Both the position numbers and the translations under genes were made by a program. From positions 174,800 through 238,799 of the IMG/VR virus record IMGVR_UViG_3300042147_000020: DNA of 64,000 bases, one strand, 5' to 3'. The notes beneath the pieces were generated by a model. It searched no databases, was not told the DNA's origin, and saw nothing but the letters and a program-made list of their open reading frames with translations. Below, piece by piece: positions 1 through 8,408 of the stretch (positions are counted from its first letter, which is position 1; the number at the start of each line of letters is the position of its first letter).

Positions 1-942
1 GTGAACGGTGGTGACCCTTTGATGATGCCTCCGAGTTACTACTGGTCGCTGATTGACATCTTGGACCGTCATAACTGTCCTGCCACGATTGCGTTTACCA
101 CTAACCTGTGGGCGTTCTATAAAAAGCCTGAGCTGTGGGTAGACTTGTTTCGTCATCCGCGTGTGGGCGTTGCTACTTCGTTTCAATACGGTGACAAACG
201 ACTCAAGGGTGACTTGAAACCGTTCACCGAAGCTGAATTCTGGGCCTGCTCTGATCTGATGTTGGAGCTGGTGGGTTATCGACCGACGTTCATTGCGGTC
301 ATTGACAAAGACAATGAAGACTCTGTACTCGACACGGTGTTACTGGCTGCTCGTATGGGAGTAGAGGTCAAGCTGAATCACGCACTGGCTTCAGGTCCAG
401 AGGTGGACTATAAAGGTGTGGTGATGGGGAACCAAAACAAGTTCTTCACTCAAGCTGACATCTACCGACACTACTTGGCCATTTATGACGCTGGGTTAGA
501 GGAACACGAGTACAACACTAAACAGATGACCCGTCGTCTGCGTAATGGTGCAACCACCTGTCCGTTGGCTCGTAACTGCGACCAACACATCCGTGCATTA
601 CAACCGGGTGGTGGTAACTACTTCTCGTGTGGAGCTTTCGGGGATGACAATGAATACCCTATCGACTTTCAGCGTGAGATGTCTGGCGAGTTCTTTACTC
701 CGTTAGAGAGTCAACCTGAACTGTTCAGTATGAAAGACGCCTGTGCTGCGTGTCCGATGTTTGCGATCTGCAACGGGTGCAAGAAGACCATTGCCGACAC
801 CAAACGTTTGGGCCTAACTGAACACCACTGTCGCACAATGAAATCGTTGGCTCCTCGGATCATCGAGGCTAACGGTCTAACGGGTCAGTTAGAACCCACT
901 CCGTATGAAGATGAAACTCCCGTTTTGATTGCCCGAGGTTAA
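1..942 (+). CDS. Radical SAM/SPASM-domain protein, 5'-truncated (N-terminal CxxxCxxC lies outside the window)
   Basis: GGDP (GGE-like) motif at the start, FTTN strand, SPASM-type Cys set CPLARNC...SCGAF...CAACPMFAICNGC...HC. Confidence 0.8.
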   Translation: MNGGDPLMMPPSYYWSLIDILDRHNCPATIAFTTNLWAFYKKPELWVDLFRHPRVGVATSFQYGDKRLKGDLKPFTEAEFWACSDLMLELVGYRPTFIAVIDKDNEDSVLDTVLLAARMGVEVKLNHALASGPEVDYKGVVMGNQNKFFTQADIYRHYLAIYDAGLEEHEYNTKQMTRRLRNGATTCPLARNCDQHIRALQPGGGNYFSCGAFGDDNEYPIDFQREMSGEFFTPLESQPELFSMKDACAACPMFAICNGCKKTIADTKRLGLTEHHCRTMKSLAPRIIEANGLTGQLEPTPYEDETPVLIARG

Positions 943-943
943 A

Positions 944-1915
944 ATGAAGCCTGTTGTCCTCTCCGTGAATCCATGGTACTTCTGTAACTTTCGCTGCTCG
1001 TTCTGTTATCTGACCGAACAACAACTCAGTGACCGTAAACTATTACCGCTAGAACGGTTGGCGGAGATGGTAGACGAAGTACAAGCCGCAGGTTACACCG
1101 TTGAACACATCGACATCTATGGGGGTGAAGTGCTGTTACTGCCCGCTGATTACCTCAACGGGATGAAGCAAGTCTTCCACGACCGAGGGATTGACGATCT
1201 GTGTCTGATCACCAACCTGTCTCTGGTGAATGACGTAGCACTCGATGATGACTACGAGTTGTCGGTGTCGTACGATTTCGAAGCCCGTGAGAAACATGAG
1301 AAAGTCTTTGACAACATGCTTGCCTTACCTCGACAGTTTAACGTGTTGAGTTTGGTGGGTCGTAAGTTCTTGGACGTCGTTACTCCAGACGAATACGTAC
1401 ACACCCTGAACCTGCTCTCCCAGCTCTGGTGTGTGGAACTTAAGCCGTACAGCGAGAACCAAGCCAACGCTGACGCAGTGTCGTTCAAAGAGTTCGAGGA
1501 CTTCGTGTGGGCAGTGATCAAACACCCTGACCGTGAGTTCTATCTGGAGAACGAATCCCTGATTCGCAAAGCGGCTGAAACCAAGACTCGTAATGCGTTC
1601 AGTGACAATCACATCTACATCACCCCTGCGGGTCGTTACGCGGTACTGGAGTTTGATGCCAACGACCGTGAGTTCTTCTTGGAGCTGGATGACTTAGCTG
1701 GTTATCAAGCCTGGTGTGCACTTGAAAAAGAGCGGGTTACCGCCAATGAGTTTTGCAGTAAGTGTCAATTCAAAGGCGGGTGTTTATCCGAACACCTAAG
1801 AGACGTTAGGTCGTTAGAGAACTCCTGTAACGGGTTCCACGACCTGTTAGTGAGGTGGGTAGATGAAGGTAGTCCAACACAGACAGAGACTCGAGATCAC
1901 GCTCGATCTGTTTAA
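944..1915 (+). CDS. Radical SAM protein with C-terminal SPASM-like Cys cluster
   Basis: CNFRCSFC (CxxxCxxC), YGGEV, ITN; C-terminal CSKCQFKGGC...SCNG; ATG at 944 after GAGG. Confidence 0.9.
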   Translation: MKPVVLSVNPWYFCNFRCSFCYLTEQQLSDRKLLPLERLAEMVDEVQAAGYTVEHIDIYGGEVLLLPADYLNGMKQVFHDRGIDDLCLITNLSLVNDVALDDDYELSVSYDFEAREKHEKVFDNMLALPRQFNVLSLVGRKFLDVVTPDEYVHTLNLLSQLWCVELKPYSENQANADAVSFKEFEDFVWAVIKHPDREFYLENESLIRKAAETKTRNAFSDNHIYITPAGRYAVLEFDANDREFFLELDDLAGYQAWCALEKERVTANEFCSKCQFKGGCLSEHLRDVRSLENSCNGFHDLLVRWVDEGSPTQTETRDHARSV

Positions 1916-2879
1916 AGGTTGTGGTCATTCCTGCGGTGGCTGCATGATTGATAAAAGTTTGGGTGGAGACGTGAAAGATCTCCCCGAACTCTTAGCCCTG
2001 ATTCAAGAAATGGTCGGGGTGGGTTACGTAGCGTTTGACCTCGGTGTAGGACCGACGGACTACATGACTGCTGATAACCGTCTCGAAGTGATGCAGAACC
2101 GAACCTTCCAAGAGATGGCTCAACAGTTTCATCAGGTAACATTCAACGCAGCCTTCCTCGACACTAACCTGCTCAACTACGGGGTGATGTGTTACGAGAT
2201 TGATTGTGCAGTACCAGACAAGCCGATTCGCTTTCTGATCCCAGCCGTACCGGCTCATTTCAAGAATGAGAAGTTCGGCTTGATGATTAAAGAAAAGTTG
2301 GAGTACATCAAAAAGAACCTGATCGTAGCTCGACTGAACGAAGCAGGTTTTGTGGTGAACTGTACACAGGAAACTGTGGACGAGAAGTTTGAGGAGCACC
2401 TACGTAATGGGTTTGATATTGAATTCGTGGTGGACAAAGACGACATCCTCACCATCCCTTACGGACGAGCCCCAAACAAAGACTTGCTGGTGGCGCAGAA
2501 TGTTCGTCGAGTGTCTCACCGAATCAGTTCTTTCTATGCGGGGCTGAATGGGGAAGACGAACGTCGACGTAACCCTGATCTCCACTACGACACTGGGACA
2601 ATGGTTAACCTGTTGTACACCGGGGGTAAACTGTACTGGGTTCCTTTCCTCAAAGACGACTGTCCGTTCATAGACGACGACTTTGTGATCCCTCGACCTT
2701 GGACTATGGCTAACCTGTTAGAAGCCCGTAATCGCGCTCGTGATAGCTCCTTGGACTATCTGGAAGGCAGTGAGTGTATGGAGTGTCCTCACCTCGGGAG
2801 CTGTGCCGAGAAAGGCATCACCAGCATCATGCAGAAGTTGTCGATTCGGGATTGCTTAGTGGGGTTGGCCGATGTTTAA
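1863..2879 (+). CDS. Divergent radical SAM-like protein
   Basis: KGCGHSCGGC (CxxxCxxC), GPTD in place of GGE, C-terminal CMECPHLGSC...DC; SD GAGG upstream. Confidence 0.75.
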   Translation: MKVVQHRQRLEITLDLFKGCGHSCGGCMIDKSLGGDVKDLPELLALIQEMVGVGYVAFDLGVGPTDYMTADNRLEVMQNRTFQEMAQQFHQVTFNAAFLDTNLLNYGVMCYEIDCAVPDKPIRFLIPAVPAHFKNEKFGLMIKEKLEYIKKNLIVARLNEAGFVVNCTQETVDEKFEEHLRNGFDIEFVVDKDDILTIPYGRAPNKDLLVAQNVRRVSHRISSFYAGLNGEDERRRNPDLHYDTGTMVNLLYTGGKLYWVPFLKDDCPFIDDDFVIPRPWTMANLLEARNRARDSSLDYLEGSECMECPHLGSCAEKGITSIMQKLSIRDCLVGLADV

Positions 2880-3918
2880 CGAATATGGCGTGATCTCTGT
2901 CAACCTCACGATGGAGATCCTAAAAGGCTGTGGGTTCAGTTGTAGTGACTGTGCCGTACAGAAAGACTTCACTACCTCAGACATTCCTCCAGAGGACTCA
3001 CAGGACCTCCTAGGGCTACTGGATGACCTGCGTGTCAATGAAGTTCGTCTGTTTGAGTTCACTGTAGGTCCAACTGACTTTATCAGTGCCCAGAATGGCT
3101 TCGAGACCTTTAAGCATCCGTTAGTCTTGGGATTAGCTGAACGGTTTGAATCCATGACGTTGTCGTTGGCAATGTTGAGTGACAACCGCTTGGTGGAATT
3201 GGGTGGGGTGATTGACCGTATGATCCCCGAGAAGAAGTTCCGGTTGGTGATCCCTGCCACCCTAAAGAACTTACAGAAACCCAAGTACGTGGAAGCCTTA
3301 CGTCGCCGAGTACACTTGTTGCGCGACAGCCTCCATTCTGCGAAGTTCTACCAGATCTACTTGAACTCCAACATGGTACAGGAGAACCTGAACGAACTGT
3401 CGTACGAGACGGTGTCGAACTCAGGGGCGGCTGACTTAGGGGTTCGTACCACGTTGGAGCACGGCTTCGGTCATGCCCGAGCAGGCTTTCAAAACTTGTT
3501 TAACCGTGATCGGTTCATCTACGACCTGAAGCTCTACGTGGAGCGCAGTAAGGTGCTGAAGGACACCCGGTACCAACGTAAGCTGATTCCGATAACGACC
3601 GATGCGTTAGAGCTGACGTACCGTGCAGGCAAGCTTTATTACACACCGGTGGTGATTGAGAAGTTCCACATCTTTGATCCGGTGTTTGAGATCCCTAAAC
3701 CGTGGACAGCACAAGCGGTACTCGATTTCAAAGAGCAGTTGTACTACCGCATGTTAGAAAAATACGTGGTACACCCATTATGTAGAGATTGTTGCTTTGT
3801 CAACACCTGTGCTTTGGGGGATCATCATGTGGTCATGGATTACCTGAAACACGATGAGTGTTTGACCGACATGAAGAACCGCCACGATATGGATCGAAAG
3901 GATACCCACGGTGAGTGA
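2872..3918 (+). CDS. Divergent radical SAM-like protein, paralog of 1863-2879
   Basis: KGCGFSCSDC, VGPTD, LxYxxGKLY motif shared with the paralog, C-terminal CRDCCFVNTC...EC. Confidence 0.75.
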   Translation: MFNEYGVISVNLTMEILKGCGFSCSDCAVQKDFTTSDIPPEDSQDLLGLLDDLRVNEVRLFEFTVGPTDFISAQNGFETFKHPLVLGLAERFESMTLSLAMLSDNRLVELGGVIDRMIPEKKFRLVIPATLKNLQKPKYVEALRRRVHLLRDSLHSAKFYQIYLNSNMVQENLNELSYETVSNSGAADLGVRTTLEHGFGHARAGFQNLFNRDRFIYDLKLYVERSKVLKDTRYQRKLIPITTDALELTYRAGKLYYTPVVIEKFHIFDPVFEIPKPWTAQAVLDFKEQLYYRMLEKYVVHPLCRDCCFVNTCALGDHHVVMDYLKHDECLTDMKNRHDMDRKDTHGE

Positions 3919-4339
3919 ACATAAAGAGTATCAACGCCTGTACGCCCAACTGGTCACAGATCACCCCGATGACTTTGCCAAGATGGAGATCGTCGAGTCT
4001 GAGGAGCTGGTGGAGAACGCTAAGCACTACTTCCGCGAAGCCACCTTCCCGCTGATCTATCCAGCGAAGTCAATGGCTGTCGCTGTAATCTACGCCCTGT
4101 TACTGGAAGAGACTTACGGGTTACATCCGTTTGACTCCCTTAAAGACCCAGACCTATTCTTAGGTCAAGACCCATACTTCCGTCCGTATGACCAACATCC
4201 CCGTGAATACGATCAATTGATCTGGTGGGTGGCGGAACAACCGAACTGGAAAGAAATGGGCTGGGCACCAAAGACAGTTGAATACTTCTACCTTGAGTGC
4301 ACTGAAGCTGGTATCAGTAAAATCAACGAAGGGGTTTGA
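3911..4339 (+). CDS. Hypothetical accessory protein of the rSAM/oxygenase operon
   Basis: 142 aa ORF overlapping the upstream stop and abutting the next start. Confidence 0.7.
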   Translation: MSEHKEYQRLYAQLVTDHPDDFAKMEIVESEELVENAKHYFREATFPLIYPAKSMAVAVIYALLLEETYGLHPFDSLKDPDLFLGQDPYFRPYDQHPREYDQLIWWVAEQPNWKEMGWAPKTVEYFYLECTEAGISKINEGV

Positions 4340-4340
4340 A

Positions 4341-4898
4341 ATGAAATATGTTGAACCGTGGAGCACTCAATTAGCCCACTTCAATGTCGCAGACTTAGTC
4401 GACTTGGGTGCCTTGCGTGACGAGATCTTCAATCTACACTGTTTGACCGAAGGGGACGACCCAGGACAGAAGTGGATCACCTCTGAGTTCGTACCTGAAA
4501 TTATCCGCATGCGTGATGAACTGATTACCCCACGGGTGATTCAGTACGCCAAAGAGTTGTGGGACTACGACATCCCCAAGATTGAAGTAGAGACCTCGGG
4601 TAAGTGGATTCCTGAAGGTGAAGGACTGTTCCCCCACGTTCATGGTGGTTCGTGTATCAGTACGATCTTTTACCCCTCACCAACTAACTTCGGGTTGAGT
4701 TTTTTCGACCCTCGTTCCAATGCTGGCCGGGGTTATCCGAAAGAGATCCGTGATCGGTTCTTTAAAGCCTTCCCGATTGTTCCTGCGGCGGGGGACATTT
4801 GGATCTTCCCAAGTTACTTACAGCACAGTGTGTCGCACGTCCAAGAGAACGTCCGGTTGAGCATGCTGTGTGAATACTACTTGCGGGAGAACGTTTGA
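4341..4898 (+). CDS. 2OG-Fe(II) oxygenase (PF13759/TIGR02466-like), copy 1
   Basis: PHVHGGS, FDPR, IFPSYLQHSV, RLS motifs. Confidence 0.85.
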   Translation: MKYVEPWSTQLAHFNVADLVDLGALRDEIFNLHCLTEGDDPGQKWITSEFVPEIIRMRDELITPRVIQYAKELWDYDIPKIEVETSGKWIPEGEGLFPHVHGGSCISTIFYPSPTNFGLSFFDPRSNAGRGYPKEIRDRFFKAFPIVPAAGDIWIFPSYLQHSVSHVQENVRLSMLCEYYLRENV

Positions 4899-5464
4899 TG
4901 GAACTGTTCCGTCCTTGGCAAACCAGTATTGCCAGAATCAACGTGGCTGAGTTGTGTGACTTGGATCAGCTTACTCAAGAGATCCTAATTGTCTCTGCCG
5001 GCGGCACTGTAGCCGTCCCACAAGACGCTACACGCGACGATCCGTTCGTAGGTGGCATCGTTACTCTACGTGACGACGTAATCACCCCCAGAGTCATGGA
5101 GTACATTCGCACAGAGTACGGTCTCAACTGTGATCCTGAAACGGTTGCTATGGAAACGTGGGGGATGAACATCGCTCCCGGTAGTGACTTGGAAACACAC
5201 ATCCACGGTTTGTCCAACTTCACGACGGTGTTCTACCCCTGTGAGTCAGACGCTCGCTTAGTACTGGTTGATCCTCGTTTGAATGCAGCACGAGGGTTCT
5301 CTAAGTCTTTGCGTGACCGTAACTTCGGTAACCTACGAGTTGACCCTAAACCCGGAGACTTGTGGATCTTCCCAAGCTTCGTCCCCCATTCTGTGACGTC
5401 AGTAGGTAACGAGTTCCGCCTGTCTTTGGTGAACGATTACTTCCTAGACCCCACCCTCGATTAA
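4898..5464 (+). CDS. 2OG-Fe(II) oxygenase, copy 2
   Basis: THIHGLS, VDPR, IFPSFVPHSV, RLS; TGATG overlap with copy 1. Confidence 0.85.
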   Translation: MELFRPWQTSIARINVAELCDLDQLTQEILIVSAGGTVAVPQDATRDDPFVGGIVTLRDDVITPRVMEYIRTEYGLNCDPETVAMETWGMNIAPGSDLETHIHGLSNFTTVFYPCESDARLVLVDPRLNAARGFSKSLRDRNFGNLRVDPKPGDLWIFPSFVPHSVTSVGNEFRLSLVNDYFLDPTLD

Positions 5465-5475
5465 GAGACCTGAAC

Positions 5476-6030
5476 ATGGAACTGATTCAACCTTGGAACA
5501 CGTCGATCCTTAAAGCGAACGTGTCCCACATGTGTAACGTGGAAGCGATTGCCGATGAGATCCTGTCACTACACAGTCTCTCCCCACAACAGTCCACCAC
5601 GCAGTACAAAATCACCCCAGAAGAGTTCCCAGCTCTGTGTGACTTCCGTGACCGGGTGGTAACTAACCTGGTGAAAGAATTCGTCAAACAAACGATGCGT
5701 TTCGACCTGACACAGTTCACCGTCGATACGTTCGGTAAGTGGTTCGAGAAAGGCATGGATCTTTCTCCGCACACTCACGGTAGCACTGGGATCACCTCTG
5801 TGTTCTACCCGGCTGACTACAAGTCGGGAATGACCGTGTACGATCCGCGTGGTAATGCTTGCCGTGGCTACCCGCGTCAAATCCGGGACGACTACTTCGC
5901 TCCCTTTTACGTCTACCCCAAGGCTGGTGATTTGATCATCATGCCGTCGTTCTTGCAACACTACGTCCCCACCGTAGAAGACGACCTGCGTCTGTCGTTG
6001 ATCAACGATTACATGTTCCCAAGCGTATAA
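5476..6030 (+). CDS. 2OG-Fe(II) oxygenase, copy 3
   Basis: PHTHGST, YDPR, IMPSFLQHYV, RLS. Confidence 0.85.
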   Translation: MELIQPWNTSILKANVSHMCNVEAIADEILSLHSLSPQQSTTQYKITPEEFPALCDFRDRVVTNLVKEFVKQTMRFDLTQFTVDTFGKWFEKGMDLSPHTHGSTGITSVFYPADYKSGMTVYDPRGNACRGYPRQIRDDYFAPFYVYPKAGDLIIMPSFLQHYVPTVEDDLRLSLINDYMFPSV

Positions 6031-6033
6031 ACA

Positions 6034-6066
6034 GAGGAGGGGTTCGTCCCCTCCTTTTATGCCGTC
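6034..6066 (+). terminator. Intrinsic terminator closing the rSAM/oxygenase operon
   Basis: GGAGGGG-ttcgt-CCCCTCC then TTTTATGCCGTC. Confidence 0.8.
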
Positions 6067-6109
6067 ATCTTATGTAAGCTTTTAGCAAATCACGGAAGGG
6101 TGAAGCATT

Positions 6110-6787
6110 ATGTTTGAAGTCGTGGATAAGGGCGCTATTAAAGAGAAACAGCGCAAGTTGAAAGAGCTGGGCCTGTATGAAGGGAATGTGGACGGTATCT
6201 GGGGACCTCTGAGTCAAGCGGCTTGGGATAAGACTCAAGGTGACAAAGTTGTGTCTGCTCCGTTTGATACCACTCGGATCATCTGGGCCACCAAGGTCTC
6301 CAAAGAGTTCATCCTCAAAGTACGGGACATCGCCAAACGTCTTGAGATGCCCACAGAGGGCTCTAACTGGTTGATGGCGTGTATGGCCTTCGAGACCGGT
6401 GAAACCTTCTCACCGACGATCAAGAACGGTGCTGGCGCTCCTTACTACGGACTGATCCAGTTCGGTGAAGCAGCAGCCAAAGATTGTGGCACTACGGTGG
6501 CCGCTCTGGTAAAGATGACTGCTGAGCAACAGCTCGACTACGTATACAAGTTCTTCAAGCCGTACACCGGTAAGCTGAAGACCCTCAGCGACGTTTACTC
6601 TCGCATCATCTGGCCAGTGGCCGTGGGTAAGTCAGAAGACTACGTGATCTTTGACACGAAGGTACGTCCTACTGCGTACGTTCAGAACAAGGGTCTGGAC
6701 ATCAACAAGGACGGCCTCGTCACCAAAGCTGAATGTGCGGCGAAGGTCCAAGAAAAATACGTGCGTGGACTGAAGTTCGTCGCCTAA
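6110..6787 (+). CDS. Modular endolysin: N-terminal peptidoglycan-binding domain plus lysozyme/transglycosylase-like domain
   Basis: QRKLKELGLYEGNVDGIWGPLS (PG_binding_1-like); MACMAFETG catalytic Glu; GLIQF motif. Confidence 0.85.
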   Translation: MFEVVDKGAIKEKQRKLKELGLYEGNVDGIWGPLSQAAWDKTQGDKVVSAPFDTTRIIWATKVSKEFILKVRDIAKRLEMPTEGSNWLMACMAFETGETFSPTIKNGAGAPYYGLIQFGEAAAKDCGTTVAALVKMTAEQQLDYVYKFFKPYTGKLKTLSDVYSRIIWPVAVGKSEDYVIFDTKVRPTAYVQNKGLDINKDGLVTKAECAAKVQEKYVRGLKFVA

Positions 6788-6799
6788 TGGAATCTATAC

Positions 6800-8365
6800 A
6801 TGAGTAAGCTAGCCGCCTACCTCCCCTCGATGGAGGAAGAACAATACGAACCAGAAATCCGTGACGATCACACTGAGTTCTCTCAGTTCGACGTGACTAC
6901 CACTGGTGCTGAAGTTGACCAAGCACTCGCCGACCACAGTACCACTGGTGAGATCATCGCCACGTTGGAAAGTATCCTCGACGACATCGAAGCTACTGAC
7001 AGTCTGACTCCGCAGTCGCGTGTGTTTATCGGCCATTCGATTCAGTCGGTACAACACCGCATCGGCTTGGTTGTTCGCACGCCTTCGATGGAAGCGAATG
7101 ATGAAGACGGTCGCCAGATCTCCATGGAAGGGATCGCCCAAGGGTTGGCTAAACTCTGGGAAGGCACTGTTGAACTGATCCGTAAGATCCTTCGCAGCAT
7201 CCGTGACTTCTTCGCCACGATCCTCGGCTTCGGTAAACGTAAAGAGAAGCGCATCAAGTATCAACTGGAGAAGGCCAAGGAAGGTGGCAACGATGCGTCG
7301 ATCTCCAAGCTGGCTGAGAAGAACCTGCTCAAGCACTTGAAAGACGTGTCTTCGGTACAGAAGGTTCTCGACAATCTGGTAGCTACGCCACTGGGGAAGG
7401 AACGTCCAGAGCAACTGGTTCTACTGTCTCCAGCGTCAGCCCAGATCGTGGTGCGTGAAAGCGATGGTCAGGTGGACAGTTCTCGTCCAATGACGGTCAA
7501 CGGTCAAGACATCGTGGCCATGCGTAAGAAAGACGTGCAGGCCGTGAGTCATATGTCCTTGGGTCAGGTCAAACACGCTCTGATTACTGCCATGGTGGTT
7601 AACGGTGGTCGTACGTTCCTTACTAAGGAGAAGGACTTCGTCTTGATGTCTCACGAAGACGTCAACGAGATGGTGTGGGACACTGCGTTCCGGGGTAAGG
7701 AAGCCCGTCAGAAAGGTAAGGAGCTGTCAGCACTGCTGATGAAGATTGCTAATAAAGCTGAGAAAGCTTTTACTAGCGTCGATGCTTTTAACCGACACAA
7801 TGTCAACATCTCAGACGAGTTGTTAAACGCCACTCGCATTGAGCGCGCCGCTGTCTTCAAGCTCTTCCGTGAGTTCGTTGGTAAGGGCGACATGGTACCG
7901 TTGGGTTCAGCAATGTTGCGCGTAGTGGATCATCATCCTGAACACTTGCAGATTGCCAAGTTCGATCACATTCCTGTGGTCAGCGAGAACATCGGTAAAG
8001 TCGTGAAGATCAAGTTCCCACAATACGGGGAAGTGAAGAAAGCGGCTGACGGTATCGTGACGGTTACACTGTTGAGTAACTTCAACGGTTCAATCGACGC
8101 TGCACTCAAAGGCTTCGAGGACGTACTGAAAGTCTACGAGCGGTTACAAGCGTGGGCGATTAGTAATGCGAAGGGTGATAACATCATCCAACGTCAGGTC
8201 AGTAGCTGCATCCGTGAAATGTACGACGAGCCAGTGAAGTACTTCAGTTCGTACATCCGTGCGGTTGGCGTAATGGAAACAGTCGTGATTGGTTGGGGTG
8301 ATTCTATCACTCACCCGTTGAGCAAGCTGACAGATTCCAAGAACCTGATGGCTGAACTCGCCTAA
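6800..8365 (+). CDS. Virion inner-head protein (phiKZ-type paralog family)
   Basis: Acidic propeptide with SME sites (LPSMEE, TPSMEA, QISMEG) followed by amphipathic helix LWEGTVELIRKILRSIRDFF. Confidence 0.7.
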   Translation: MSKLAAYLPSMEEEQYEPEIRDDHTEFSQFDVTTTGAEVDQALADHSTTGEIIATLESILDDIEATDSLTPQSRVFIGHSIQSVQHRIGLVVRTPSMEANDEDGRQISMEGIAQGLAKLWEGTVELIRKILRSIRDFFATILGFGKRKEKRIKYQLEKAKEGGNDASISKLAEKNLLKHLKDVSSVQKVLDNLVATPLGKERPEQLVLLSPASAQIVVRESDGQVDSSRPMTVNGQDIVAMRKKDVQAVSHMSLGQVKHALITAMVVNGGRTFLTKEKDFVLMSHEDVNEMVWDTAFRGKEARQKGKELSALLMKIANKAEKAFTSVDAFNRHNVNISDELLNATRIERAAVFKLFREFVGKGDMVPLGSAMLRVVDHHPEHLQIAKFDHIPVVSENIGKVVKIKFPQYGEVKKAADGIVTVTLLSNFNGSIDAALKGFEDVLKVYERLQAWAISNAKGDNIIQRQVSSCIREMYDEPVKYFSSYIRAVGVMETVVIGWGDSITHPLSKLTDSKNLMAELA

Positions 8366-8370
8366 CACGC

Positions 8371-8408
8371 GGCATAGAGGGAGGGCTCACGCCCTCCCTC
8401 GTTATGCC
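8371..8408. terminator. Bidirectional terminator between convergent genes
   Basis: GGCATA-GAGGGAGGGC-tcac-GCCCTCCCTC-gt-TATGCC. Confidence 0.75.

What the first reader, a model, noticed from the sequence alone, without database searches (positions are those of the whole stretch)
4341..6030. Tandem triplication of HxH-type 2OG-Fe(II) oxygenases
Seen: three ~185 aa paralogs share PWxT at the N-terminus, HxH (HVH, HIH, HTH) rather than HxD, DPRxNAxRG[YF], PS[YF]xxH and RLS. They are clearly diverged, so the duplication is old and retained. Inference: each hydroxylates a different residue or site of the same substrate the rSAM enzymes act on.
Basis: partly seen in the sequence, partly recalled or inferred. 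Interest (0 to 1): 0.65.

Follow-up and report, generated by a model that had tools for sequence, protein, structure and literature searches.

The report
Three oxygenase paralogs ending phage rSAM cassette
Three old, diverged copies of an uncharacterised iron-oxygenase gene close a 14-gene radical-SAM operon that many phiKZ-like giant phages share, and the operon also encodes a protein with a near-invariant Cys-His tail that is a testable candidate for their common substrate.

Summary
Window 4341-4898, 4898-5464 and 5476-6030 encode three 184-188 aa paralogs (oxA, oxB, oxC; 36-39% identical).

HxH is not special to them. It is the hallmark of the whole PF13759 family, including the solved but uncharacterised 3BVC and 2RG4.

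The oxC model is a prolyl-hydroxylase-like double-stranded beta-helix. H99/H101, H162 and R172-x-S174 sit on the canonical strands.

The three genes are the tightly packed last genes of a ~13.5 kb operon: a cupin, six radical-SAM proteins, four unknowns, then the oxygenases and a hairpin. The cassette recurs in at least 14 phiKZ-like jumbo phages, including pPa_SNUABM_DT01 and RSF1.

- oxA and oxC are separate orthologous clades.
- oxB is an older, faster-evolving lineage kept in at least two phages.
- Copy number elsewhere is 1-3, with independent duplications and one degenerate copy.

New lead: cassette gene 3 (u183) ends in CHxSCHxxCHxxRGRR, invariant across 82 homologues.

Best reading, inferred: non-redundant tailoring oxygenases of a RiPP-like protein-maturation pathway. 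The substrate is unproven.

The parts
1..942 (+). 3' part of rS371, a radical-SAM/SPASM-like gene. The full gene is G000:C1:174626-175741, which is L003 16627-17742 (371 aa).
   Evidence: PF04055 at 47.5 bits, phrog_1802 at E 4e-49, and the motifs CNFKCTFC and CAACPMFAICNGC.
929..1915 (+). rS328, a radical-SAM gene (328 aa).
   Evidence: PF04055 at 40.3 bits and the motif CNFRCSFC. In L012 its orthologue is fused to the u142 orthologue.
1863..2879 (+). rL338, a divergent radical-SAM-like gene (338 aa).
   Evidence: CX3CX2C motif CGHSCGGC and phrog_31457. It is 24-25% identical to rL348 at E 1e-27 to 1e-29. No Pfam hit.
2872..3918 (+). rL348, a divergent radical-SAM-like gene (348 aa) and paralog of rL338.
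   Evidence: CX3CX2C motif CGFSCSDC and phrog_31457.
3911..4339 (+). u142, a 142 aa protein of unknown function and a probable partner of the radical-SAM enzyme rS328.
   Evidence: phrog_20737 at E 1e-37. Orthologues occur in the related cassettes compared (the reduced L019 and L020 clusters were not checked). In L012 it is fused to the C-terminus of the rS328 orthologue as one 456 aa ORF.
4341..4898 (+). oxA, a PF13759 oxygenase paralog (185 aa, HVH).
   Evidence: PF13759 at 37.7 bits. It belongs to the oxA clade of 12 sequences with 99% support. An AAGGGG ribosome-binding-like stretch lies upstream, and the start is 1 nt after the u142 stop.
4898..5464 (+). oxB, a PF13759 oxygenase paralog (188 aa, HIH) and the fastest-evolving copy.
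   Evidence: PF13759 at 35.7 bits. Its ATG overlaps the oxA TGA. The word search found only itself. The exhaustive search found an orthologue, P0018, at 49% identity, lying in an A-B-C triplet in L013-L015.
5476..6030 (+). oxC, a PF13759 oxygenase paralog (184 aa, HTH) and the most conserved copy.
   Evidence: PF13759 at 31.8 bits and phrog_81 at E 2e-16. Orthologues are 46-80% identical. The AlphaFold model has pLDDT 94.1. Foldseek's top matches are 3BVC and 2RG4, followed by P4H, PHD2 and Tpa1.
6035..6055 (.). GC-rich hairpin (8 bp stem, 6 of them GC) followed by TTTTAT, 5 nt after the oxC stop codon. It is the probable end of the operon.
   Evidence: Seen in the sequence. The scan reports the stem on the - strand. 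On the + strand the T run is read from the sequence, not called by the tool.

Best explanation
oxA, oxB and oxC are three functional, non-redundant paralogs of the PF13759 family. This family has a prolyl-hydroxylase-like double-stranded beta-helix fold. Its metal site is His-x-His...His, and an Arg-x-Ser sits where 2-oxoglutarate oxygenases bind the C5 carboxylate of 2-oxoglutarate.

They are the last three genes of a conserved operon of phiKZ-like jumbo phages. That operon also encodes a small cupin, six radical-SAM proteins (at least three with SPASM-type cysteine motifs) and four proteins of unknown function.

The most likely role is oxidative tailoring, probably hydroxylation, of the same protein substrate that the radical-SAM/SPASM enzymes cross-link. 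The best candidate substrate is the flexible C-terminal tail C-H-x-S-C-H-x-x-C-H-x-x-R-G-R-R of the cassette's own gene 3, u183. Different paralogs would serve different positions or maturation stages.

Shown:
- Paralogy, family membership and fold.
- Conservation of the ligand residues.
- Operon structure.
- Conserved synteny and duplication history.
- Invariance of the u183 tail.

Inferred:
- Dependence on 2-oxoglutarate.
- Hydroxylase chemistry.
- A protein rather than a small-molecule substrate.
- u183 as that substrate.
- Division of labour among the three copies.
For: Family and fold:
- All three pass the PF13759 cut-off.
- The oxC model has pLDDT 94.1. H99/H101 lie at the end of strand 96-99, H162 opens strand 162-164, and R172/S174 lie on strand 171-180.
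- Nearest structures are 3BVC and 2RG4 (TM 0.82 and 0.79), then prolyl hydroxylases, PHD2 and Tpa1.
- The family profile also hits prolyl 4-hydroxylase 6T8M at E 0.0024, aligning the distal His and the Arg.
- H99, H101, H162 and R172 are at least 90% conserved in 140 representatives.

Operon:
- The genes are 1 nt apart, overlapping, or 11 nt apart, and a hairpin follows oxC.

Synteny:
- The same gene order occurs in pPa_SNUABM_DT01, RSF1 and 12 metagenomic jumbo-phage loci.
- Three more distant relatives also sit beside radical-SAM genes.
- All radical-SAM matches in this genome lie in the cassette.

Non-redundancy:
- The oxA clade has 99% support and the oxC clade 96%. The oxB pair has 98% support and lies outside A+C.
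- All copies keep the ligand residues.

Protein substrate:
- rS345 passes the SPASM domain cut-off. Its best named matches are peptide maturases: YhhB, FxsB, PapB, DynA and the anaerobic sulfatase maturase.
- The u183 family of 82 sequences has invariant C168, C172, H173, C176 and H177, and near-invariant H169, S171, R180, R182 and R183.
- The tail is the low-confidence end of an otherwise confident model.

Precedents:
- A protein with HxS repeats matured by radical-SAM enzymes (PMC13128918).
- Radical-SAM enzymes that cross-link His (PMC11499958).
Against: - No biochemistry exists for any PF13759 member in the papers searched here. The chemistry, and even the use of 2-oxoglutarate, is therefore unproven. 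I know of no characterised 2-oxoglutarate oxygenase with a three-His site (own knowledge).
- Copy number varies from 1 to 3 between cassettes that otherwise look complete, so three copies are not required.
- Distant family members occur in T4-like phages without radical-SAM neighbours.
- The u183 tail could be a metal-binding site of a structural protein rather than a substrate.
- No RiPP recognition element or leader was identified.
- Several structural neighbours act on small molecules: PolD, HygX and SnoN.
- Oxygen-dependent and oxygen-sensitive enzymes in one operon need some explanation.
Confidence: 0.45

Rival explanations
1. The enzymes and cassette are as described, but the substrate is another protein or a short peptide rather than u183. 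Candidates are an adjacent tail-fibre or baseplate protein, or a small ORF such as those found between the radical-SAM genes in some relatives. u183 would then be a metal-binding accessory or structural protein.
For: - The cassette lies between tail-fibre-like genes and a baseplate-hub or cell-wall hydrolase gene.
- Small ORFs of 54-88 aa lie between rS337 and rS371 in L004, L005, L008 and L016.
- Cys/His repeats are classic metal ligands.
- The marine homologue of u183 carries a Peptidase_S74 fibre-chaperone domain, which fits a structural protein.
Against: - This genome has no small ORF at that position. The gap is only 32 nt and holds a hairpin.
- u183 is the only cassette protein with an invariant, flexible terminal motif, and it is present in every cassette examined.
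Confidence: 0.2
2. The cassette makes or modifies a small molecule, nucleotide or DNA base, and the three oxygenases hydroxylate that compound.
For: - The best NCBIfam matches of rS328 are viperin-like and MoaA, and there are weak QueE-like PHROG matches.
- Small-molecule 2-oxoglutarate oxygenases (PolD, HygX, SnoN) are among the structural neighbours.
- The DT01 paper links its radical-SAM genes to DNA repair or metabolism.
Against: - Those radical-SAM matches cover only the N-terminal cluster-binding region and fall far below the cut-offs.
- SPASM-type motifs and peptide-maturase matches dominate.
- No nucleotide-metabolism, glycosyl- or amino-transferase gene lies in the cassette.
- The nearest characterised structural neighbours by fold include protein prolyl hydroxylases.
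Confidence: 0.15
3. The three copies are functionally redundant, kept for dosage, or oxB is drifting towards loss. In that case the triplication has no division of labour.
For: - Copy number varies from 1 to 3 between cassettes.
- One L012 copy has lost HxH and the distal His.
- Against L013, oxB path length is about twice that of oxA and about four times that of oxC (1.17 against 0.65 and 0.30).
- oxB has changed residues that are invariant in A and C: K88, W89 and Q161.
Against: - A and C have been kept as separate clades across phages whose other cassette proteins differ by 20-60%.
- oxB keeps every ligand residue and an intact frame in two lineages that are only 48% identical.
Confidence: 0.1
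4. The oxygenases act independently of the radical-SAM enzymes on a host target. This would resemble the proposed role of the many 2OG-Fe(II) oxygenase auxiliary genes of cyanophages and pelagiphages.
For: - PHROGs files phrog_81 under 'moron, auxiliary metabolic gene and host takeover'.
- Homologues in Pelagibacter phage Mosig and Synechococcus phage S-SKS1 lack radical-SAM neighbours.
- Tpa1 and PHD2-like folds act on cellular proteins.
Against: - Start and stop codons abut or overlap within the cassette.
- Linkage to radical-SAM genes is invariable in every member of this subfamily examined, down to about 27% identity.
Confidence: 0.1

Closest known systems
PF13759 (2OG-FeII_Oxy_5) proteins with solved structures: 3BVC (Roseovarius nubinhibens Ism_01780) and 2RG4 (Oceanicola granulosus)
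   Same: Same Pfam family and same fold (TM 0.82 and 0.79). They share H-x-H, DPR, the distal His and R-I-S.
   Different: About 20% identity. They are bacterial and about 25 residues longer, and their function is also unknown. The phage proteins score below the TIGR02466 cut-off.
Phage '2OG-Fe(II) oxygenase' auxiliary genes of T4-like cyanophages and pelagiphages (phrog_81)
   Same: Same PHROG and Pfam family.
   Different: Those genes are scattered among replication and structural genes with no radical-SAM neighbours. Here the genes are the fixed last members of a radical-SAM operon.
Prolyl-4-hydroxylase, PHD2 and Tpa1-type 2-oxoglutarate protein hydroxylases
   Same: Double-stranded beta-helix core, a distal His on strand VII and a basic residue on strand VIII. 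Foldseek E is about 1e-6, and the profile hit to 6T8M has E 0.0024.
   Different: The metal motif is HxH rather than HxD. Identity is 11-17% and there is no sequence-level family membership.
RiPP pathways that combine radical-SAM enzymes with a 2-oxoglutarate oxygenase, for example polytheonamide PoyB/C/D with PoyI (own knowledge)
   Same: Several radical-SAM enzymes plus an Fe/2-oxoglutarate hydroxylase acting on one ribosomal substrate.
   Different: Those pathways are bacterial, with a leader-peptide precursor and unrelated enzyme subfamilies. Here the cassette is phage-borne, and the candidate substrate is the tail of a folded 183 aa protein.
HXS antiphage system (HxsA-D; PMC13128918)
   Same: A whole protein with His-x-Ser repeats is matured by radical-SAM enzymes with a small partner protein. 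The u183 tail contains H-T-S, H-G-A and H-G-S. u142 is fused to a radical-SAM enzyme in L012.
   Different: HxsB and HxsC models score 13-24 bits against cut-offs of 268-370, and no HxsA match was found. HXS has no oxygenases and is bacterial, not phage-borne. The cassette is not a member.
Triceptide (three-residue cyclophane) radical-SAM/SPASM maturases, including His-linking HtkB and HaaB (PMC11499958)
   Same: The best NCBIfam matches of rS345 are the cyclophane-forming YhhB and FxsB. The substrate motif type, aromatic-x-x with His, is present in the u183 tail.
   Different: Scores are far below the family cut-offs (48 against 445 bits). No cross-link has been shown.

Membership tests
Pfam PF13759 (2OG-FeII_Oxy_5) | Whole-protein score at or above the gathering cut-off of 27 bits | tested here: met
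   37.7, 35.7 and 31.8 bits for oxA, oxB and oxC. The genome search found exactly these three places.
Pfam PF13759 (2OG-FeII_Oxy_5) | Double-stranded beta-helix fold like the solved members 3BVC and 2RG4 | tested here: met
   The oxC model has pLDDT 94.1. Foldseek gives 3BVC at E 1e-11 and TM 0.82, and 2RG4 at TM 0.79. oxA and oxB were not folded.
Pfam PF13759 (2OG-FeII_Oxy_5) | Family signature H-x-H ... D-P-R ... H ... R-x-S | tested here: met
   The signature is invariant in the three paralogs. It is at least 90% conserved in 140 representatives and is present in 3BVC and 2RG4.
NCBIfam TIGR02466 | Score at or above the curated cut-off of 62.5 bits | tested here: not met
   27.3, 27.2 and 17.8 bits. 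The proteins are related to this subfamily but are not members of it.
Fe(II)/2-oxoglutarate-dependent oxygenase superfamily | His-x-Asp/Glu...His facial triad | tested here: not met
   The carboxylate position is His: HVH, HIH and HTH. This holds for the whole PF13759 family.
Fe(II)/2-oxoglutarate-dependent oxygenase superfamily | Basic residue on strand VIII (R/K-x-S/T) that binds the C5 carboxylate of 2-oxoglutarate | tested here: met
   R172-L-S174 lies on the last core strand, 171-180. It aligns with R-I-A of prolyl 4-hydroxylase 6T8M. This is positional evidence only.
Fe(II)/2-oxoglutarate-dependent oxygenase superfamily | 2-oxoglutarate turnover coupled to substrate oxidation | not testable with these tools
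   Needs an enzyme assay.
Radical-SAM/SPASM protein or peptide maturation (RiPP-like) system | Radical-SAM CX3CX2C cluster motif in the neighbouring enzymes | tested here: met
   All six have it. Two pass the PF04055 cut-off, rS371 and rS328. rS345 (26.3 bits) and rS337 (19.2 bits) score below it, and rL338 and rL348 have no Pfam match.
Radical-SAM/SPASM protein or peptide maturation (RiPP-like) system | SPASM auxiliary-cluster domain | tested here: inconclusive
   TIGR04085 passes for rS345 only (30 against 27 bits). It scores 17.5 bits for rS337 and 14.9 bits for rS371. A CX2CX5CX3C-like motif occurs in three of the six.
Radical-SAM/SPASM protein or peptide maturation (RiPP-like) system | A co-encoded precursor with a conserved core that is modified | tested here: inconclusive
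   The candidate is u183, with an invariant C-terminal CHxSCHxxCHxxRGRR. Modification has not been shown. The oxC-u183 complex prediction gave no verdict.
HXS system (HxsA-D) | HxsB and HxsC equivalog models above their cut-offs, and an HxsA repeat protein | tested here: not met
   HxsB scored up to 23.8 bits against 370. HxsC scored up to 23.3 bits against 267.9. u183 matched no NCBIfam model.

The most novel reading that the evidence does not exclude
The cassette is a phage-encoded, RiPP-like pathway. Six radical-SAM/SPASM enzymes and up to five cupin-fold oxygenases, including oxA, oxB and oxC, jointly rebuild the Cys-His tail of a tail- or baseplate-associated virion protein (u183) into a cross-linked, hydroxylated tip that may bind metal. 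This would be the first virion protein shown to need radical-SAM plus oxygenase maturation, and the first function for the PF13759 family with its three-His site.
Probability: 0.25. Interest if true: 0.85.

Novelty: new variant of a known kind. Interest (0 to 1): 0.6.

Why it matters
PF13759 is a large family, abundant in marine and jumbo phages, and I found no characterised member in the literature searched here. Authors have noted clusters of six to eight radical-SAM genes in phiKZ-like phages as 'highly unusual' without explaining them (PMC12390700, PMC8541153).

Placing the three oxygenases at the end of one conserved operon, and finding in that operon a protein with an invariant 16-residue Cys-His-Arg tail, turns an annotation puzzle into a direct experiment. 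Co-express the tail protein with subsets of the cassette and read the mass of one peptide.

If the inference holds:
- It gives a function to PF13759.
- It tests whether a three-His site supports 2-oxoglutarate chemistry.
- It shows that phages use RiPP-type chemistry on their own proteins.

Tried and rejected
- **Near-identical DNA in isolates.** Megablast of window 1-8400 against 50,697 phage records found nothing.
- **Word search with oxB.** It returned only oxB itself. The exhaustive search was therefore used, and it overturned the idea that oxB is an orphan.
- **Complex prediction, oxC with u183.** Score 0.21 against a mark of 0.32, so no verdict. This counts neither for nor against binding.
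- **Fold of u183.** The model is confident (pLDDT 87.5). It has no convincing match among solved structures: Foldseek best E 0.16, VIA-align best Z 4.0. The weak baseplate rows at Z about 3 are not used as evidence. Only uncharacterised phage proteins match in BFVD.
- **Atlas look-ups.** u245 gave nothing usable. u373 gave a weak PLD-like feature match (score 0.90, 111 shared features), treated as a lead only. One Atlas call failed because the server was busy.
- **Sigma-70 promoter scan.** It found fewer sites than in shuffles. It is also uninformative for phiKZ-like phages, which use their own RNA polymerases.
- **Literature.** No functional study of PF13759, TIGR02466, 3BVC or 2RG4 was found.
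- **Expression data.** The DNA occurs in two rhizosphere metagenome studies and no RNA run holds it.
- **HXS membership.** Considered and rejected, because scores are far below the cut-offs.
- **Link between number of CH units and number of intact oxygenase copies.** The counts are suggestive but the sample is too small and not phylogenetically independent. CH units against intact copies: 1/1 in L005, 2/1 in L012, 3/2-3 in most, 13/3 in L007, 4/1 in L019 and L020.
Full report
**Observation**

The window is the last 64 kb of a 238,799 bp IMG/VR virus record estimated at about 86% complete. It is a phiKZ-like jumbo phage:
- A phiKZ internal-head-protein gene lies at 6800-8365.
- DUF7208, DUF7941, an NAD-dependent ligase and a ribonucleotide reductase lie further on.

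Three adjacent + strand genes at 4341-4898 (oxA, 185 aa), 4898-5464 (oxB, 188 aa) and 5476-6030 (oxC, 184 aa) are 36-39% identical to one another. BLASTP E-values are 1e-39 to 1e-52. Each passes the Pfam cut-off for PF13759 and matches phrog_81. They fall below the TIGR02466 cut-off.

**What the proteins are**

A 140-sequence family alignment shows that H99, H101, Y111, D123, P124, R125, P148, G151, P157, H162 and R172 (oxC numbering) are at least 90% conserved.

The only sequence relatives with solved structures are two uncharacterised structural-genomics proteins, 3BVC and 2RG4. Both also read H-I-H. HxH is therefore the hallmark of the family, not a local oddity.

The oxC model is confident, with pLDDT 94.1. 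Its secondary structure places HxH at the end of the second core strand, H162 at the start of the seventh, and R172-L-S174 on the eighth. These are the canonical positions of the metal triad and of the residue that binds the C5 carboxylate of 2-oxoglutarate.

After 3BVC and 2RG4, the nearest structures are 2-oxoglutarate oxygenases. They include bacterial prolyl 4-hydroxylase, PHD2 and Tpa1, and also small-molecule enzymes such as PolD, HygX and SnoN. The family profile reaches prolyl 4-hydroxylase 6T8M at E 0.0024.

I found no functional study of the family. To my knowledge a three-His site has not been described in a characterised 2-oxoglutarate oxygenase. Dependence on 2-oxoglutarate is therefore likely from the conserved Arg, but unproven.

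**Context**

The genes are packed as an operon:
- The u142 stop and the oxA start are 1 nt apart.
- The oxA TGA overlaps the oxB ATG.
- oxB and oxC are 11 nt apart.
- A GC-rich hairpin plus TTTTAT follows oxC.

Fetching the DNA upstream of the window (L003) shows the full cassette on the + strand:
1. cupin/JmjC-like, 174 aa
2. radical-SAM/SPASM rS345
3. u183
4. u245
5. u373
6. rS337
7. rS371
8. rS328
9. rL338
10. rL348
11. u142
12. oxA
13. oxB
14. oxC

. All six radical-SAM-like proteins carry CX3CX2C. Three carry a SPASM-type CX2CX5CX3C motif. rS345 passes the SPASM domain cut-off, and its best named matches are peptide maturases. Every radical-SAM match in the genome lies in this cassette.

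Tail-fibre-like genes precede the cassette, and a baseplate-hub or cell-wall hydrolase gene follows it.

**Distribution**

The same cassette, in the same order, is found in:
- Pseudomonas phage pPa_SNUABM_DT01.
- Ralstonia phage RSF1, and by tblastn RSL2, RsoM3USA and Burkholderia phages FLC6, FLC8 and SURPRISE13.
- Twelve metagenomic jumbo-phage loci.

Three more distant PF13759 relatives picked from the exhaustive search also sit beside radical-SAM genes. Two of these are in reduced cassettes where a PF13640 oxygenase replaces the cupin.

A 28%-identical homologue in a T4-like pelagiphage has no such neighbours.

Published descriptions mention these radical-SAM and oxygenase genes without explaining them. 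One calls eight radical-SAM genes in a structural cluster 'highly unusual'.

**Duplication history**

In trees of 25 and 64 sequences:
- oxA falls in a clade of 12 with 99% support.
- oxC falls in a clade of 21 with 96% support.
- These two clades are sisters with 90% support.
- oxB pairs with one orthologue with 98% support, outside A+C.

That orthologue, P0018, is 48-49% identical. It was missed by the word search and found by the exhaustive one. It lies in the same A-B-C triplet in L013-L015.

Between this phage and L013, oxA is 63% identical, oxB 48% and oxC 76%. The radical-SAM proteins are 68-85% identical. oxB is therefore the fastest-evolving copy. It has replaced residues that are invariant in both other clades: K88, W89, Q161, P52 and L32. 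It still keeps all ligand residues.

Other cassettes carry one copy (L005), A plus C, or A plus a B-like copy (L016). Some have a short fourth type of about 150 aa that lacks the DPRxNAxRGYP loop (L001, L007, L009, L010). RSF1 and L012 duplicated the gene independently. One L012 copy has lost HxH and the distal His.

**A candidate substrate**

Cassette gene 3, u183 (L003 13239-13790), has a homologue in every cassette examined. All end in C-H-[TSY]-S-C-H-x-x-C-H-x-x-R-G-R-R. Across 82 homologues, C168, C172, H173, C176 and H177 are invariant, and H169, S171, R180, R182 and R183 are nearly so.

- The unit count is usually three. It is one in L005, two in L012, four in L019 and L020, and thirteen in L007.
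- In the marine L019 the repeats are followed by a Peptidase_S74 domain, known from tail fibres and endosialidases. This suggests a fibre-like virion protein.
- The u183 model is confident (pLDDT 87.5) except for the tail (about 56). It has no convincing known fold.
- u142 is fused to the rS328 orthologue in L012, which marks it as a partner of that enzyme.

There are published precedents: a whole protein with HxS repeats matured by radical-SAM enzymes (PMC13128918), and radical-SAM enzymes that cross-link His (PMC11499958). By score, however, the cassette is not a member of either system.

**Interpretation**

The best-supported reading is that oxA, oxB and oxC are non-redundant tailoring oxygenases of a phage-borne, RiPP-like protein-maturation pathway, with the u183 tail as the most likely shared substrate.

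Only paralogy, family, fold, operon structure, synteny, duplication history and tail invariance are shown. The chemistry and the substrate are inferred. The single complex prediction (oxC with u183) gave no verdict.

The rivals are:
- Another protein or peptide substrate.
- A small-molecule or nucleotide pathway.
- Redundancy or decay.
- Action on a host target independent of the radical-SAM enzymes.

**Verdict**

The genes themselves are new members of a known but uncharacterised family. The cassette is a new variant of radical-SAM plus oxygenase maturation systems. Interest is moderate to high, because it is now directly testable in cultivable relatives.

Noticed in passing
L003 13239-13790 (G000:C1:171238-171789, upstream of the window): u183 is a 183 aa protein ending in CHTSCHGACHGSRGRR. 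The Cys/His/Arg positions are invariant or nearly so in 82 homologues. It has a confident model with no known fold.
   Followed up: yes
L007 1954-2637 (IMGVR_UViG_3300011799_000001): The u183 homologue has its CHSSCHS unit expanded to 13 CH units before the same terminal RGRR.
   Followed up: partly
L019 3713-4585 (TARA marine contig, 241 kb): Here the u183 homologue carries four CH units followed by GDGPGDGSSDRRLK and a Peptidase_S74 (fibre or endosialidase chaperone) domain. The cassette is reduced, and a PF13640 oxygenase replaces the cupin.
   Followed up: partly
L012 10560-11930 (IMGVR_UViG_3300044852_000015): The rS328 and u142 orthologues are fused into one 456 aa ORF. This phage is closest to the window in its flanking structural genes (80-84% identical), yet its cassette genes are much more diverged or rearranged. 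That suggests cassette exchange or fast evolution.
   Followed up: partly
L003 16598-16623 (between rS337 and rS371, just upstream of window position 1): A strong terminator-like hairpin (10 bp, 7 of them GC, then TTTATG) lies inside the cassette. Several relatives have small ORFs of 54-88 aa at this position. The cassette may be two transcription units.
   Followed up: no
L001 8135-8587, L007 9517-9990, L009 9092-9586, L010 9131-9586: A fourth, short (about 150 aa) PF13759-like gene type lies before u142 in some cassettes. It keeps HxH, the distal His and R-x-S but lacks the DPRxNAxRGYP loop. It is absent from the window's phage.
   Followed up: partly
window 6110-6787: A 225 aa protein has a weak peptidoglycan-binding N-terminus and a strong match to the C-terminal part of baseplate-hub or peptidase PHROGs (phrog_4928 and phrog_196). 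It is conserved immediately after the cassette in relatives.
   Followed up: no
protein P0172: A u183 homologue is labelled 'Streptomyces sp. CHB9.2' in NCBI but sits on a 241,743 bp contig. This is probably a jumbo-phage contig filed within a bacterial assembly.
   Followed up: no
L003 14466-15587: u373 has no family match. The Atlas feature search gives a weak PLD-like lead (score 0.90, few shared features).
   Followed up: partly
window 4341-6030: Near-identical DNA occurs in rhizosphere metagenomes from two studies, and relatives occur in compost metagenomes. No RNA run holds it.
   Followed up: no
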